A stretch of 36,048 nucleotides of DNA from Octopus bimaculoides (GCF_001194135.2 NC_068981.1:99542548-99578595), one strand, 5' to 3'; numbered from the stretch's first letter, positions 492-11,084 are shown. Program-made: numbers and translations. The notes: a model not told the origin generated them from the sequence alone.

Positions 492-640
492 TTTGTTTAC
501 ATTCTAAGAATTTACGACAAAATAGTTTCTCTCACATTTGTTTGTTTACATTCTGAAATTTTACGATAAAATCGTTTCTCTCACACAATAGTTTAGTTTA
601 TTTACATACTGAGAACCTAAGGTGAAAATCTTCCCTTTTA
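492..640 (+). repeat. About 49-56 bp degenerate tandem repeat (3 units) upstream of LINE ORF1
   Basis: tttgtttacattct..a.tttacga.aaaat.gtttctctcaca at 492 and 541; a weaker third unit at about 597. Confidence 0.7.
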
Positions 641-1034
641 CTAAAGTTTTCACTCAATTTTCCTTATAGTCACCTCGTTTTACACTTTCTCAAAAATTTC
701 TATTCTTATCCCATCTTCTCTCCTTCAATTTTCTCTCTTAGTTTCTCTGTTTCTCACTCCCGCTCTCTTCCGTGATATATATTCTTCATTTTTCTTTTTC
801 ATTTTCATTTTTTTTCTTCTTGAGTTATCTTCTCTCTCTTTCTCATACTTCTCTATTCCTATCACATCCTCTCTCTATCTATCAAAATTCCCTATTTTGT
901 ACTCTGTACGCATTCTCTATTCCTGTACATTTTCTCTACTTCGTATTCTCCCCCCCCTCTATATCCTCTTTTCTTTCTTTCTATTAGTATTTCTCTATAC
1001 TCTAAGATAACTTCTCTCTCAAATACCGTGCACT

Positions 1035-1989
1035 ATGGATACCAGCAGACGAAGCTTTATACAGCGCCAAATTGAAGCTAACAAGAAGAAGATGCACCGA
1101 AACTGGAAATTAGAGGAAATTCGCCTTCTTGTACAAGCATGGAACTTGGCCAAAGGATCACCAGCAAATGATCTAATAGCTGAAACCTTGGATAGGTATA
1201 ATTTCTACAGATCAATGGCTCAAATTGAACAGAAGAAACAGGAGCTCATACGCTCCTACGATCTCATAAAACCACATCTTGACCTAGAAGGCATTATGAG
1301 AGACACAGACTGTAAAAAGGACAATGAAGACCCTGCACATTGCTCAAACTCAGGAAGGCCAAACAGATGACCGAAACAAAGCAAATGCTACCAGTGCTAT
1401 AGTCACTACTGAAAGCTGCAATGGCCATAGTGAATTCAACCAACACAGCACCACACCAAACGACAGAGACAGGAGAACAGACAAAGAAATGGTGAACACA
1501 AACAAGCTTCAAGCCCAAGCATGTTATGCAAAGGAAAAGAAACAGATAATCTGTAAATTCTATCTAAATGGTACCTGTTGGCATGGGGAAAAGGGAGCAA
1601 ACTGCAAATTTTCCCATCCCAAACACCACCAGCTAAACAAGCTAGATGACCACTCACAACAAAATAAGTGGGAGCGCAGAAAAGGGAGACCAAAAAGCTT
1701 AAACATGCATACCCATAATCCACCAAGAACCAACAAGACTCACGAAGAAAGAAGTCCATATATTCCTTCTGCTCTCAACAAAAGGCTATATGCAGAGGCT
1801 GTGCGAACTGCAGCAGCTGAACAGCAAGCTTTTTTAAGTATGGCCCAGAAAATAGTGCTTCAACTAACATGGGTACAGAGTCAACACCACACAAACCACT
1901 ATCCAAGACCACCACAGACGATGGATCAAGGATGGCCACCACTAACACCAGGAACCCCTGCACAGGTATCACACCCATATTCCTACTGA
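1035..1989 (+). pseudogene. LINE ORF1 with a Myb/SANT-like (trihelix) domain and a CCCH zinc finger; one frameshift
   Basis: ORF 1035-1370 has WKLEEIRLLVQAW...IAETLDRYNFYRSMAQIEQKKQELIRSY. ORF 1324-1989 has CKFYLNGTCWHGEKGANCKFSHP (C-x7-C-x8-C-x3-H) and YAEAVR. A TGA at 1297 in the second frame places the shift between 1300 and 1370. Confidence 0.75.
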
Positions 1990-2900
1990 ATATCTGGGGC
2001 CTATTACGAACAGGCGGCAAAGACAAGTTTCTATACCTGAAAGACCTAGTTACATGCAATCAAGCAATATGCATGGTGCTTACTGAAACGCATCTAACAT
2101 CTAATATAGCAGATGCAGAGATAAACATACCAGAGTATGCCGTACTCCGAACAGACAGAAAGGATAGAAGTCATGGGGGAGTTGCAATGTACATCCGAGA
2201 AGATGTCACACCCCTACTACTCCTATCACACTCAAGCTCTGTTTGTGATACTTTAATAGTACACATAAAACAAATTGATGTATTGTATGCTCAATATACC
2301 GTCCACCAAATTCCGCAAAGCAGGAGGGTAAATCTGAGGATAGCCTCAGACGCATAGAAGAGGTCTTGATAAATCTGGACCAATACATCAATATACTTTT
2401 CCTAGGCGACTTTAACCTCCCAAATGTTAAATGGCCTGAAGGTCACATCCTCTCTGAGATGTCACTGCATGAACAAAGCCAGGCAAAATCTTTGTTAGAA
2501 CTCTCCAACATGCTGTTCATGGAACAAGTGATACTCCAACCAACCAGGGGAAGCAATATTTTAGATCTCTGCTTCACAAACAATGTGAGCCTAATCTGTA
2601 ATGTGAAAGTAACACCTACATCTCTCTCAGATCATAACATTATAGAATTAACTATGTATGGTCCTAGACAACCCACTGACACCCACCCCATCAGGAGGAC
2701 TCAAGCCATATCTAACCTGAATTTCCACAGGGCGGACTGGAAATCAATTTGCAAAGAGATTTGAAATCAAAACTGGCATGCCAATTGAATTCCTAGAGAC
2801 AGGAAAATCCTTATAAGACACAGAACAAAGGTCTCAAACCAGTTAAAAAGAGAACTGGAGGATAGGAAAAGGGCTAAATTAAAACTAGAGCAATCGAAAA
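1966..2900 (+). pseudogene. LINE ORF2 N-terminus: AP-type endonuclease, frameshifted near 2280, stop at 2762
   Basis: Motifs LLNIWGL, LTETHL, RTDR..RSHGGVAMYI, then after the frameshift VCSIYRPPNS, LGDFNLP, PTRGSNILDLCFTN, SDHNIIEL. Confidence 0.93.
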
Positions 2901-8277: not shown

Positions 8278-10290
8278 CATCATCATCATTTAACGTCTGT
8301 TGTCTATGCTGGCACAAGGTGGATGGTTTGATTGGGCTGGCATGCTGGAAGGCTGCACAGACTCCAGTCTAATTTGGCATGGTTTTCTATGGCCGGATGC
8401 CCTTCCTAACGCCAACCACTCTGAGAGTGTAATGAGTGCTTTTACCTGCTACTGGCACGGGTGCTATTTGCTTGACACCAAGGTGCTTTTATGTGCCACT
8501 GGCATGGGTGCCAATTTGCCTGACACTGATATCTGCCATAACTGCAATTTTGCTCTGCTTGATAGGTTTTCTTCTCAAGCATGACATAATACCAAAGGTC
8601 TCAGTCACTGCCTCTGTGAAGTCCAACATTTTACCTCTGTGAGGCCCAATGCTCATAAGGAACTCAGCCACTTTGCCTCCATGATGGTCAATGCTTGGAA
8701 GGTGTTCTTTACATGCCATCAGCATGGGTGTACTTGGCTTGATGGGTCCTCTTAAGCACAGCACATCACCAGAGGTCTTGGTCACTAGTCATTACCTCTG
8801 TGAGGCTCAAAGTTCAAAGATCATGCTTCACCACCTCGTTCTATGTCTTTCTGGGTTTACCTCTACCACAGGTTCCCTCTACAGTTAGAGATTGGCACTT
8901 CTTCACACAGCTGTCCTCATTCATATGCATCACATGATCATACCAGCACAGTCGTCTCTCTTGCACACCACATCTGATGCCTCTTATGCCTAACTTTACT
9001 CTCAAGATGCTTACACTCTGTCAACTATGCACACTGACGTTGCACATCTAGTGAAGCATATTGACTTCATTTTTTCAAGCCTACACATGTCCTCAGCTGT
9101 CACAGCCCATGTTTCACTGCCATGCAGCATAGCTGTTTGCACACAGGCATCAAACAATCTGCCTTTCATTTTGAGAGAGAAGCCCTTTGTTGCCAGCAGT
9201 GGTAGGAACTCTCTGACCTTTGCCCATCCTAAACTTATTCTCACAGCTACACTCTTGGAGCATCCACCTCCACTTCTAACTTGGTCACCTAGATAACGGA
9301 AGCTATCTACTACCTCTGGCTTGCCCCACTGGCAGTTGATGGAGTCTATTTTCTATCTGTTTTCAGCATTTATTGTACCTGTATATCTTCCACATACAAA
9401 AGATAGTTTCACTGGTAACCTTCCCCTGATATTGCTGCACCATTTATGTGTGCAAAGCTTACACTGGGTGCATCTTATGGAGTTTCTATCTACACCTTTT
9501 CTACAGATTAAGCAGGGCCATCTACTTGAAGGGATTTGTGATTTGCTTGCCTTCCTACTTACTATGACTTTGGTTTTTACTAGGTTAACTCTAAGGCTCT
9601 TTGATTCTAGACCTTGCTTTCATACCTGGAACTTCTTCTCTAGTTCATGTAGTAATTTTGCTATAAGAGCAAGGTCATCGACATAGAGGAACTCCCAGGG
9701 GTATCCTGTCTTGAATTCCTCTGTTATTGCTTGGAAGACTATGATGAACAATATGGGGCTGAGCACCAATCCTTGTTGAACCACTACTTGTACCCTGAAT
9801 TCTTCGCTGTACTCATTGCCGACCCTCACCTTACTGGTAGCATTCCTGTACATAGTTTGTACAGCTCTCGCCAACCACTCACCTATCCCTAGTTTCCTCA
9901 TTGACGACCAGATAAGGGATTGCGGTGGGTGGGTTTTGGGGCCTGTCAAAGGCTTTCTCCAAGTCAACAAAGGCCAAGTACAGAGGTTTATCTTTGGCTC
10001 TCTGCAGCTGCCTCACCAGAAATGTAGCATCAGTGGTGCTTCTCCCTGGCACAAAACCAAATTGCATCTCATCTAAACTAACTCTCTCCCTAAGTTGGGC
10101 TATGACTCTCTCTGTAACTTTCATCACCTGATCCAGCAATTTGATACCTCTGAAATTATTTCTGTCTAAGGCATCACCTTTACCTTTATAGCAGTTGACT
10201 ATGGTGCTGCTACATCATTCATTGGGTATGACTCCTTCGTGAATCACCTGATTTACAATATGGCTGACCAGACCATAACCACATGGCCTT
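8278..10290 (-). mobile_element. 5'-truncated RTE LINE: RT, PHD-like finger, 3'UTR and (ATG)n tail; frameshifts and stops
   Basis: YKGKGDALDRNNFRGIKLL, QFGFVPGRSTTDA, FVDLEKAFDR, QQGLVLSP.LF, LYVDDL, VNLVKTK, FRYLGD, MLHGSETW, GKPRKT. Tail is catcatcat on the plus strand at about 8278. Confidence 0.96.
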
Positions 10291-11084
10291 TGGGGAGAAA
10301 TCTCTTGCTATATTGGTAGCGATTACATATTTTTCTCATCAACACATTGTGGAGATATCATCATATGAACATATATATATATATATACATTATAATGGGA
10401 CACAATTGTGTTTTTGGATTCATTAATTTAAATGTTCATATCCTTATGTTTGAGGTGTCTGGGGCCTCTGATACAACCACTATTCTTCCACTGATTGTGT
10501 CTTCCTCTTCTTTTCAGGATAAATAGGATCAGAGGGTTCTGAGTAACCTTTCTATCTGATTTGTTGATGAGGTTGACTTCTTTTGCTTCTTCACATGCAC
10601 TCATGGGTAGAAAAGGTTTATTCCTGGAGTTGTATTTCTAGTGTCACTGCCTTCCAAAGCTGGCATACTTCACTTTTGCACTCATATAGACACCACCAGT
10701 TTTGTTCGTGTGAATGCAATCATTATGTATGCTTAATTCAATTAGTTTAAGCTGAATTATGATAACTGATAGCTTATGGTCATTGTGGTCAAGAGTTATA
10801 AAAATTTGAGTGAATTAGAACCCTGCATATTAATTTCTAGCTGATGTTTGTTATATTTGTATGGATATAACCCTAAACATTCTTAGCTGGAAATAAAAAA
10901 ATAGAAATTCAGATTTACTCATTATATACATTTGTGTTAAGAAACACAATTATATCTAGGCACTACATACACATATTTGAATATTTATGACTATAATTAT
11001 TTTTCAATTTAGTCTGCCTAAAATCTAGTTTTGTGAACATTCTAGTGAAATATTGTATACAATGAAGTCCTGATGGTTATATTG

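What the first reader, a model, noticed from the sequence alone, without database searches (positions are those of the whole stretch)
1035..1989. LINE ORF1 with a trihelix/Myb-SANT domain joined to a CCCH zinc finger
Seen: removing one frameshift between 1300 and 1370 gives a ~318-aa ORF1. Its N-terminus has the W-x2-EE-x2-LL...IA..L....RS..Q...K...L...Y pattern and is followed by a C-x7-C-x8-C-x3-H finger, directly upstream of a CR1/L2-type endonuclease. Known: Jockey-group ORF1s are usually described with PHD, RRM, CCHC or esterase modules, while trihelix Myb/SANT domains are typical of Harbinger accessory proteins and MADF/GT-1-like factors. Inference: this may be an undescribed ORF1 architecture, made by domain capture, that pairs a DNA-binding module with an RNA-binding finger.
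Basis: partly seen in the sequence, partly recalled or inferred. Interest (0 to 1): 0.75.

Follow-up and report, generated by a model that had tools for sequence, protein, structure and literature searches.

The report
Octopus LINE ORF1: Myb-like plus CCCH
This is a dead, truncated copy of an octopus jumping gene (a LINE retrotransposon) whose first protein really does join a Myb/SANT-like three-helix domain to a CCCH zinc finger, a domain combination that recurs in intact copies and that I could not find described for LINE ORF1 proteins.

Summary
Window 1035-1989 reads as one 318-aa ORF1 once a 2-nt deletion near 1342 is allowed. It is followed by, and overlaps, the endonuclease (EN) of ORF2.

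The same collinear ORF1 occurs intact elsewhere. One example is Octopus vulgaris locus L003, where a 318-aa ORF1 precedes an EN+RT ORF2. In five other loci the ORF1 also sits directly upstream of the same EN. All named relatives are "hypothetical" Octopus proteins.

ORF1 has three conserved blocks separated by variable, disordered linkers:
- **N-terminal three-helix domain.** 10 of 20 family members hit Pfam Myb_DNA-bind_4, one of them above threshold. The window copy scores 20-21 bits against a cut-off of 27. In two AlphaFold models the top PDB fold match is the GT-1 trihelix domain, but that match is not statistically significant.
- **C-x7-C-x8-C-x3-H finger.** It passes the Pfam zf-CCCH threshold and resembles Muscleblind fingers.
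- **Long C-terminal helix** with a Pro/Gln tail.

PHD-type LINE ORF1s share the same CCCH finger, which points to exchange of the N-terminal module.

The window copy itself is defunct: two frameshifts, in-frame stops, an internal deletion and no RT. DNA binding and "domain capture" remain inferences. Repbase and Dfam could not be checked.

The parts
600..1034 (+). Pyrimidine (CT)-rich leader, probably the 5' UTR of the element. The 5' boundary is approximate.
   Evidence: GC skew runs from -0.6 to -0.76 and AT skew from -0.38 to -0.57 over about 600-1000, then flips at the ORF1 start. Comparable CT-rich leaders lie directly upstream of ORF1 in L003 (9672-10000) and L007. The leaders do not align at DNA level.
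1035..1989 (+). ORF1, 318 aa once one frameshift is allowed. Start codon ATG at 1035, stop codon TGA at 1987-1989.
   Evidence: It is collinear with intact P0001 (371 aa), P0005 (289 aa), P0007 (291 aa) and P0062 (318 aa).
1098..1316 (+). Myb/SANT-like (trihelix-type) three-helix domain with a family-specific extension (RSYxLIKPHxxxLDxI). ORF1 residues 22-94.
   Evidence: Pfam Myb_DNA-bind_4 scores 20-21 bits in the window. 10 of 20 family members hit it, and P0030 scores 29.3 bits against a gathering score of 27. The AF2 model has pLDDT 82.8 and three helices. The top Foldseek PDB hit is the GT-1 DNA-binding domain, 2jmw, with TMq 0.58 but E = 2.9.
1341..1344 (+). Frameshift (roughly 2-nt deletion) that splits ORF1 into the 1035-1370 and 1324-1989 frames.
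   Evidence: tblastn of P0017 switches frame between 1313 and 1342. P0033 reads ...NNEDRVYSAQTQEE across the junction.
1552..1617 (+). CCCH zinc finger, C-x7-C-x8-C-x3-H (CKFYLNGTCWHGEKGANCKFSH).
   Evidence: Pfam zf-CCCH scores 22.0 bits against a gathering score of 20.5. The family profile hits Muscleblind-like CCCH fingers in the PDB at E = 1.4e-4 to 1.7e-3. This is the most conserved block, with 50% mean pairwise identity.
1768..1893 (+). Long C-terminal amphipathic helix (YAEAVRTAAAEQQAFLSMAQKIVLQLTW...). ORF1 residues 246-287.
   Evidence: AF2 predicts helix 246-287 with pLDDT 81-92. Mean pairwise identity is 45%, against 10-16% in the linkers.
1894..1986 (+). Pro/Gln-rich ORF1 tail (RPPQTxDQGWPPLTP) that overlaps the start of the ORF2 frame.
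   Evidence: The tail is conserved in the ORF1 frame (43% identity). The overlapping ORF2-frame peptide is not conserved upstream of 'TPI(L/F)LLN'.
1869..2285 (+). ORF2 start and first half of the apurinic-type EN (frame 0).
   Evidence: tblastn of L003 ORF2 residues 2-150 gives 49% identity. Pfam hits Exo_endo_phos.
2282..2764 (+). Second half of the EN, in a different frame (second frameshift at about 2283-2330).
   Evidence: Pfam Exo_endo_phos_2 scores E = 3.4e-13.
2765..2884 (+). Remnant of the EN-RT linker, with in-frame stops and a deletion of about 35 aa. Detectable homology to the element ends here and no RT follows.
   Evidence: The L003 ORF2 alignment stops at residue 385 of 916 at window position 2884. 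There are no further hits anywhere in the 36-kb window.

Best explanation
Window about 600-2884 is a decayed, 3'-truncated copy of a cephalopod (Octopus) LINE of the CR1/L2 (Jockey-superfamily) kind.

**ORF1 protein layout**
- An N-terminal Myb/SANT-like three-helix domain of the trihelix (Myb_DNA-bind_4) type, with a basic third helix.
- A variable disordered linker.
- One MBNL-like CCCH finger.
- A second linker.
- A long amphipathic C-terminal helix and a Pro/Gln tail that overlaps the ORF2 start.

**Proposed mechanism in active copies (inferred)**
- ORF1p binds the element's own single-stranded RNA through the CCCH finger and its basic flanks.
- It self-associates, or docks to ORF2p, through the C-terminal helix to build the ribonucleoprotein particle.
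- The Myb-like domain adds contact with double-stranded DNA or chromatin, for nuclear tethering or target-site choice. This plays the part that the PHD finger plays in the related PHD-CCCH ORF1s.

The architecture most likely arose by exchange of the N-terminal module on a shared CCCH-containing ORF1 chassis.

**Shown:** the architecture, its recurrence, its linkage to EN+RT, and the domain assignments at profile and fold level. **Inferred:** every binding activity, oligomerisation, and the direction of the module swap.
For: **One protein, recurrent**
- Intact collinear ORF1s exist at 26-35% identity: P0001, P0005, P0007, P0062.
- Conserved blocks have 34-50% mean identity, against 10-16% in the linkers.

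**Part of a LINE**
- In O. vulgaris locus L003, ORF1 (318 aa) overlaps a 916-aa ORF2 by 154 nt. That ORF2 carries Exo_endo_phos_2 and RVT_1 (E = 2e-30).
- The EN directly follows ORF1 in L001, L005, L006 and L007.
- All named members are Octopus vulgaris or O. sinensis hypothetical proteins on different chromosomes.

**Myb-like domain**
- 10 of 20 members hit PF13837 in the same register, and no other family matches more than 2 members.
- P0030 scores 29.3 bits against a gathering score of 27.
- The AF2 model has pLDDT 82.8 and three helices.
- GT-1 trihelix (2jmw) is the top PDB fold hit for both models. ZZZ3 and another Myb domain also appear.
- Family median pI is 9.4, and helix 3 carries a net charge of about +3.

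**CCCH finger**
- It passes the Pfam gathering score and matches MBNL fingers.

**Module exchange**
- PHD-type ORF1s share the first CCCH finger: hhalign probability 97.6%, E = 4e-12. One of them is L004, with a full EN+RT ORF2 37% identical to that of L003.
- L002 has a Myb-like N-terminus followed by tandem CCCH fingers.
Against: - The window copy and most relatives score below Pfam's gathering score for Myb_DNA-bind_4. P0001 does not hit it at all.
- Foldseek E-values are 1.8-3, which is not significant. Small three-helix bundles match many folds, for example PEX14 and homeodomains.
- A profile search of PDB sequences found no Myb protein for the N-terminal domain. It found only a short chance-level match to ribosomal protein uS8.
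- The window's own domain has roughly neutral net charge over residues 22-94.
- hhalign aligned only the finger between the Myb-type and PHD-type ORF1s, not the C-terminal region.
- No non-LINE relative of the N-terminal domain was found, so no donor is known.
- No binding or oligomerisation data exist.
- The CR1 versus L2 clade was not determined.
Confidence: 0.7

Rival explanations
1. The N-terminal block is a generic three-helix bundle that only resembles Myb/SANT. It serves protein-protein contacts (oligomerisation, or binding ORF2p or a host factor) rather than nucleic-acid binding.
For: The Pfam scores are sub-threshold in most members, and P0001 has no hit. Foldseek E-values are above 1, and unrelated helical bundles (PEX14, calmodulin fragments) sit in the same hit list. 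The first Trp is replaced in P0001 and P0018.
Against: Half of the members independently pick the same Pfam family in the same register, and one passes the curated cut-off. The top structural hit in two separate models is the archetypal trihelix domain. The third helix is consistently basic.
Confidence: 0.22
2. The family and its ORF1 are already in Repbase or Dfam as an Octopus CR1/L2 consensus. The architecture would then be unremarked rather than new.
For: Octopus repeat libraries exist and contain full-length LINE consensi (PMC9115989). The elements are multi-copy in O. vulgaris.
Against: Open-literature searches found no paper joining ORF1 of non-LTR elements with Myb/SANT or CCCH domains. 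The 2014 ORF1 survey lists neither domain. All database names for members are 'hypothetical', 'uncharacterized' or 'NA'.
Confidence: 0.35
3. Segment 1035-1300 is an independent neighbouring gene or exon that only appears fused to the CCCH ORF because of the assumed frameshift.
For: In the window the two halves are in different frames.
Against: At least four intact ORFs from different sources carry both halves in one frame. Close relatives read straight across the junction.
Confidence: 0.02
4. The Octopus proteins are domesticated host genes derived from an ORF1, and the window holds a pseudogene of such a gene.
For: Several members are annotated as protein-coding genes in the O. vulgaris and O. 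sinensis assemblies.
Against: The window copy, L001, L003, L005, L006 and L007 all continue directly into a LINE EN. Many members are truncated or frameshifted fragments, as expected of repeats. One gene model (P0013) spans 21 kb and does not translate to the query, which is typical of mis-annotated repeats.
Confidence: 0.04

Closest known systems
PHD-type ORF1 of CR1/L2 LINEs (Type III of Khazina & Weichenrieder; CR1_2, CR1_6 and L2_4 of Metcalfe & Casane 2014, PMC4120745)
   Same: - Sits directly upstream of a related EN+RT ORF2. L004 ORF2 is 37% identical to L003 ORF2.
- Has a small N-terminal chromatin/DNA-reader-type domain, a long low-complexity linker and a homologous first CCCH finger (hhalign 97.6%).
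- Has a C-terminal 'YA(D/N)A...FL(E/D)(L/M)' helical region that looks similar by eye.
   Different: - The N-terminal module is a Myb/SANT-like three-helix domain, not a PHD finger. The window ORF1 has no PHD hit.
- It has one CCCH finger instead of three.
- The CCCH fingers themselves are not mentioned in the published survey.
N-terminal zinc-finger + Myb DNA-binding region of R2 elements (PMC11204384, PMC10499050)
   Same: A non-LTR retrotransposon protein that combines a zinc finger with a Myb-type three-helix domain at its N-terminus.
   Different: - In R2 the domains are part of the single RT-containing ORF.
- The R2 fingers are C2H2 and bind target DNA.
- R2 uses a restriction-like endonuclease and is specific for a 28S rDNA site.
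- Here the domains lie in a separate ORF1 of an APE-type LINE, the finger is CCCH (typically RNA-binding), and no site specificity is known.
Trihelix / Myb_DNA-bind_4 (PF13837) proteins such as plant GT-1 and the Myb-like accessory proteins of PIF/Harbinger transposons
   Same: Three-helix layout, W...E..L..W / I..L...G / R..Q...K...L..Y spacing, Pfam register 2-70 of 89, and best fold match 2jmw.
   Different: - The match is only marginal in sequence.
- The domain carries a family-specific conserved extension (SYxLI[KR]PHxxxLDxI).
- It is encoded by a retrotransposon ORF1 rather than a host transcription factor or a DNA-transposon accessory gene.
- The link to Harbinger proteins is from memory and was not tested.
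Muscleblind-like (MBNL) CCCH fingers
   Same: Best solved-structure sequence matches for the finger: 2e5s, 5u6l and 3d2q at E = 1.4e-4 to 1.7e-3. These are CCCH fingers that bind single-stranded RNA.
   Different: Spacing is C-x7-C-x8-C-x3-H with a GxxG insert between the second and third Cys. It is a single finger rather than tandem pairs.

Membership tests
LINE (non-LTR retrotransposon) ORF1 | Encoded immediately 5' of, and on the same strand as, an ORF2 with an apurinic-type EN and an RT | tested here: met
   The window has ORF1 followed by the EN only. The full ORF1+EN+RVT_1 arrangement is present in L003. ORF1 followed by the EN is present in L001, L005, L006 and L007.
LINE (non-LTR retrotransposon) ORF1 | Multi-copy and dispersed, with many decayed copies | tested here: met
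   Members lie on at least 8 different O. vulgaris / O. sinensis chromosome records, and many are truncated. No full copy-number census was done.
LINE (non-LTR retrotransposon) ORF1 | Binds its own RNA and forms a ribonucleoprotein particle | not testable with these tools
   Only inferred from the CCCH finger.
Myb/SANT-like trihelix domain (Pfam PF13837 Myb_DNA-bind_4) | Profile score at or above the gathering score (27 bits) | tested here: inconclusive
   The window scores 20.1-21.4 bits, which is not met. Family member P0030 scores 29.3 bits, which is met. 10 of 20 members hit at E <= 1, best 1.6e-7.
Myb/SANT-like trihelix domain (Pfam PF13837 Myb_DNA-bind_4) | Three-helix bundle superposable on a solved trihelix or Myb domain | tested here: inconclusive
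   AF2 gives three helices at pLDDT 82.8. The top PDB hit is GT-1, 2jmw, with TMq 0.58 and rmsd 2.2 A over 58 columns, but E = 2.9 and probability 0.60. GT-1 is again the top hit for the full-length model, with ZZZ3 and another Myb domain further down.
Myb/SANT-like trihelix domain (Pfam PF13837 Myb_DNA-bind_4) | Binds double-stranded DNA through helix 3 | not testable with these tools
   The only support is the basic helix 3 (mean net charge about +3) and a median domain pI of 9.4.
CCCH zinc finger (Pfam PF00642) | Profile score at or above the gathering score (20.5 bits), with three Cys and one His in the right order | tested here: met
   Scores are 22.0 and 20.6 bits. The pattern C-x7-C-x8-C-x3-H can be read directly in the sequence. 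H184, C191, F193, H195 and P196 are invariant in alignment A4.
CR1/L2 group (Jockey superfamily) LINE | APE-type EN of the Exo_endo_phos_2 kind, followed by an RT and a C-terminal 'ERR...' domain | tested here: met
   The EN is present in the window. The RT and the C-terminal region (SLERRWRD..VWKIL..G) are present in L003 only. Treating that C-terminal motif as CR1-group-typical is from memory.
CR1/L2 group (Jockey superfamily) LINE | Placement inside the CR1 or L2 clade by RT phylogeny (RTclass1) | not tested
PHD-type (Type III) ORF1 | N-terminal PHD finger | tested here: not met
   The window ORF1 and its family have no PHD hit. PHD hits occur only in P0035, P0048 and P0059.
R2-type N-terminal DNA-binding region | C2H2 finger(s) plus Myb inside the RT-containing ORF of an element with a restriction-like endonuclease | tested here: not met
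   Here the ORF1 is separate, the finger is CCCH and the EN is APE-type.

The most novel reading that the evidence does not exclude
Cephalopod CR1/L2-group LINEs carry a previously undescribed ORF1 class. In it, a trihelix-type Myb/SANT domain has replaced the PHD finger on a shared CCCH-finger chassis. ORF1p, not only ORF2p, would then read DNA or chromatin and could steer where the element integrates. This would parallel, in a two-ORF APE-type LINE, the finger + Myb target recognition of R2.
Probability: 0.4. Interest if true: 0.6.

Novelty: new variant of a known kind. Interest (0 to 1): 0.45.

Why it matters
ORF1 proteins are the least understood part of LINEs, and their modular make-up is a live topic.

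- **New module pair.** A Myb/SANT-like plus CCCH ORF1 adds two modules to the published repertoire of RRM, CCHC, PHD, Tnp22, esterase and coiled coil.
- **Shared chassis.** It links Myb-type and PHD-type ORF1s through a common CCCH finger.
- **Testable idea.** ORF1p in some APE-type LINEs may contact DNA or chromatin directly.
- **Annotation.** It explains a set of "hypothetical protein" gene models in Octopus genome annotations as LINE ORF1s.

The window copy itself has no biological activity.

Tried and rejected
- **Word-indexed protein searches.** Searches with the single ORF1, the family alignment A3 and the N-domain alignment A2 returned only 1, 2 and 4 hits, all family members. They revealed no host-gene donor.
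- **N-domain profile against PDB sequences.** The only result was a short uS8 match (E = 0.005, 30 residues). In uS8 that stretch forms a helix plus beta-strands (a point from memory, not tested here), so I judged it chance. phmmer of the P0030 domain against the PDB gave nothing.
- **DNA-level alignment of 5' leaders.** Comparing the window with L003 and L007 gave no match outside the coding sequence, so the 5' boundary could not be fixed.
- **Search for the rest of ORF2.** tblastn with the L003 ORF2 found no RT anywhere in the window. The window also holds no second copy of the element.
- **Ka/Ks.** I considered it between the window and L007 and dropped it, because 67-81% nucleotide identity means synonymous sites are likely saturated.
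- **Identifying source organisms.** A literature search did not identify the organisms behind GCA_024449705.1, SRR22824287, SRR3401912 or the ENA metagenome contigs.
- **TRAS1 citation.** The paper (PMC2868851) turned out not to document a Myb domain in TRAS1 itself, so that comparison was dropped.
- **Khazina & Weichenrieder 2009.** This paper was not held in the library.

Full report
**1. What is in the window**

Frame 0 is open from the ATG at 1035 to 1370, and frame +1 from 1324 to the TGA at 1987-1989. Relatives show that these are two halves of one gene. P0017 aligns to frame 0 up to nt 1313 and to frame +1 from nt 1342. P0033 reads '...NNEDRVYSAQTQEE' across the junction. Four intact homologues carry both halves in one ORF.

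'NWKLEEIRLLVQAW ... LIAETL ... RSMAQIEQKKQELIRSY' and C-x7-C-x8-C-x3-H (nt 1552-1617) can both be read directly.

The ORF2 frame opens at 1869 and overlaps ORF1. The ORF1 stop lies inside 'TPIFLLN', the first conserved motif of the EN. The EN is recognisable (Exo_endo_phos_2, E = 3.4e-13) but is split by a second frameshift near 2283-2330.

Comparison with a full-length relative shows how decayed this copy is. Beyond the EN only a damaged piece of the EN-RT linker remains, with in-frame stops and about 35 residues missing. Homology ends at 2884, and there is no RT anywhere in the 36-kb window. This copy is dead and, unusually for a LINE, truncated at the 3' side.

Upstream of ORF1, about 600-1034 is strongly pyrimidine-rich on the coding strand.

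**2. Relatives, and linkage to a complete LINE**

A word-indexed search found one homologue, P0001 (E = 5e-37, collinear over 90% of the query). On its 1.8-kb metagenome contig, ORF1 is followed by an EN very similar to the window's.

An exhaustive HMMER search with the two-sequence profile found 61 proteins at E <= 1e-3. They include intact ORF1s P0005 (289 aa) and P0007 (291 aa), and many fragments.

Cluster look-ups show that every member carrying a name is an Octopus vulgaris or O. sinensis 'hypothetical', 'uncharacterized' or 'NA' protein.

One of them, P0062, is an intact 318-aa ORF1 on O. vulgaris chromosome record OX597829.1. In that locus (L003):
- ORF1 (10001-10957) overlaps a 916-aa ORF2 by 154 nt.
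- The ORF2 carries Exo_endo_phos_2 and RVT_1 (E = 2e-30).
- After one frameshift, the ORF2 C-terminal region follows.

ORF1 is also followed directly by the EN in L005, L006 and L007.

**3. Anatomy of ORF1p**

Pairwise identity among five full-length members, by region:

| Region | Mean pairwise identity |
|---|---|
| N-terminal domain | 34% |
| Linker 1 | 16% |
| CCCH finger | 50% |
| Linker 2 | 10% |
| C-terminal helix | 45% |
| Tail | 43% |

AlphaFold2 on the full-length alignment agrees with this layout:

| Residues | Prediction |
|---|---|
| 26-94 | Confident helical N-domain |
| 96-171 | Disorder |
| 172-198 | Medium-confidence finger (no zinc is modelled) |
| 199-240 | Disorder |
| 246-287 | Long helix, pLDDT 81-92 |
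| 288-318 | Disordered tail |

The tail motif 'PPQ..(Q/T)GWPP' is conserved in the ORF1 frame. The overlapping ORF2-frame peptide is not conserved, so the constraint belongs to ORF1.

**4. Is the N-domain Myb/SANT-like?**

*Profile evidence*
- The window copy hits only Myb_DNA-bind_4, at 20-21 bits (E = 3e-4 to 9e-4). This is below the 27-bit gathering score.
- Across a 20-member alignment of the domain (A2), 10 members hit the same family in the same register. No other family is hit by more than two members.
- P0030 passes the curated threshold at 29.3 bits, E = 1.2e-6. It carries the family-specific 'SYxxVRPHIKSLDVIL' extension, so it is a true member.

*Fold evidence*
- AlphaFold2 on A2 gives a three-helix domain with mean pLDDT 82.8.
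- Its best PDB match is the DNA-binding domain of Arabidopsis GT-1, the founding trihelix protein: TM 0.58/0.50 and rmsd 2.2 A over 58 columns.
- The full-length model again has GT-1 first, and also lists the ZZZ3 and another Myb-like domain.

*Caveats*
- Foldseek E-values are 1.8-3.
- P0001 has no Pfam hit.
- A profile search of PDB sequences found no Myb protein.

I rate homology to the trihelix/Myb-SANT group at about 0.7. The domain is basic in the family (median pI 9.4, helix 3 net charge about +3), which is compatible with nucleic-acid binding. The window's own core, residues 22-94, is about neutral.

**5. The finger**

zf-CCCH passes Pfam's threshold. The family profile's best solved-structure matches are Muscleblind-like CCCH fingers, which bind single-stranded RNA (E = 1.4e-4 to 1.7e-3). 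H184, C191, F193, H195 and P196 are invariant in A4.

**6. A shared chassis with PHD-type ORF1s**

The profile search also pulled in proteins with a different layout: an N-terminal PHD finger (sub-threshold but consistent hits), three tandem CCCH fingers and a C-terminal 'FLELK...' helix.

One of these, P0035, sits on a 4.7-kb marine-metagenome contig (L004). It lies upstream of a 982-aa EN+RT ORF2 that is 37% identical to the Octopus ORF2.

Profile-profile comparison aligns the first finger of the two ORF1 classes with probability 97.6% and E = 4e-12. The C-terminal regions look alike by eye ('YA[DN]A' then 'FL[ED][LM]') but were not aligned by hhalign.

The contig of P0030 (L002) shows a Myb-like N-domain followed, in another frame, by tandem CCCH fingers. 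That is an intermediate layout.

Together these results point to exchange of the N-terminal module (PHD versus Myb-like) on a common CCCH ORF1. This fits the modular, reticulate ORF1 evolution described for this superfamily (PMC4120745). The direction of the swap and the donor are unknown, and no non-LINE relative of the domain was found.

**7. Mechanism**

Shown:
- The architecture, its conservation and its linkage to EN+RT.

Inferred from established knowledge of LINE ORF1 proteins, CCCH fingers and Myb/SANT domains:
- The finger and its basic flanks bind the element's RNA.
- The long amphipathic helix mediates self-association or docking to ORF2p.
- The Myb-like domain contacts dsDNA or chromatin, the same kind of job a PHD finger would do in the sister class.

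The closest functional parallel is the zinc-finger + Myb N-terminus of R2, which positions that element on its rDNA target (PMC11204384, PMC10499050). R2's domains are C2H2 fingers, lie in the RT-containing ORF, and belong to a site-specific element with a restriction-like endonuclease, so this ORF1 is not a member of that system.

**8. Novelty**

The published survey of Jockey-superfamily ORF1s lists RRM, CCHC, PHD, Tnp22, esterase, zinc finger/leucine zipper and coiled coil, plus 'no hits' classes. It lists neither Myb/SANT nor CCCH.

[quoted passage not shown] Other full-text searches found nothing relevant.

Repbase and Dfam could not be queried. I therefore file this as a new variant of a known kind (a LINE ORF1 with a new module combination), not as a new kind of system.

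**9. Verdict**

Domain capture and DNA binding are unproven, and the window copy is a fossil.

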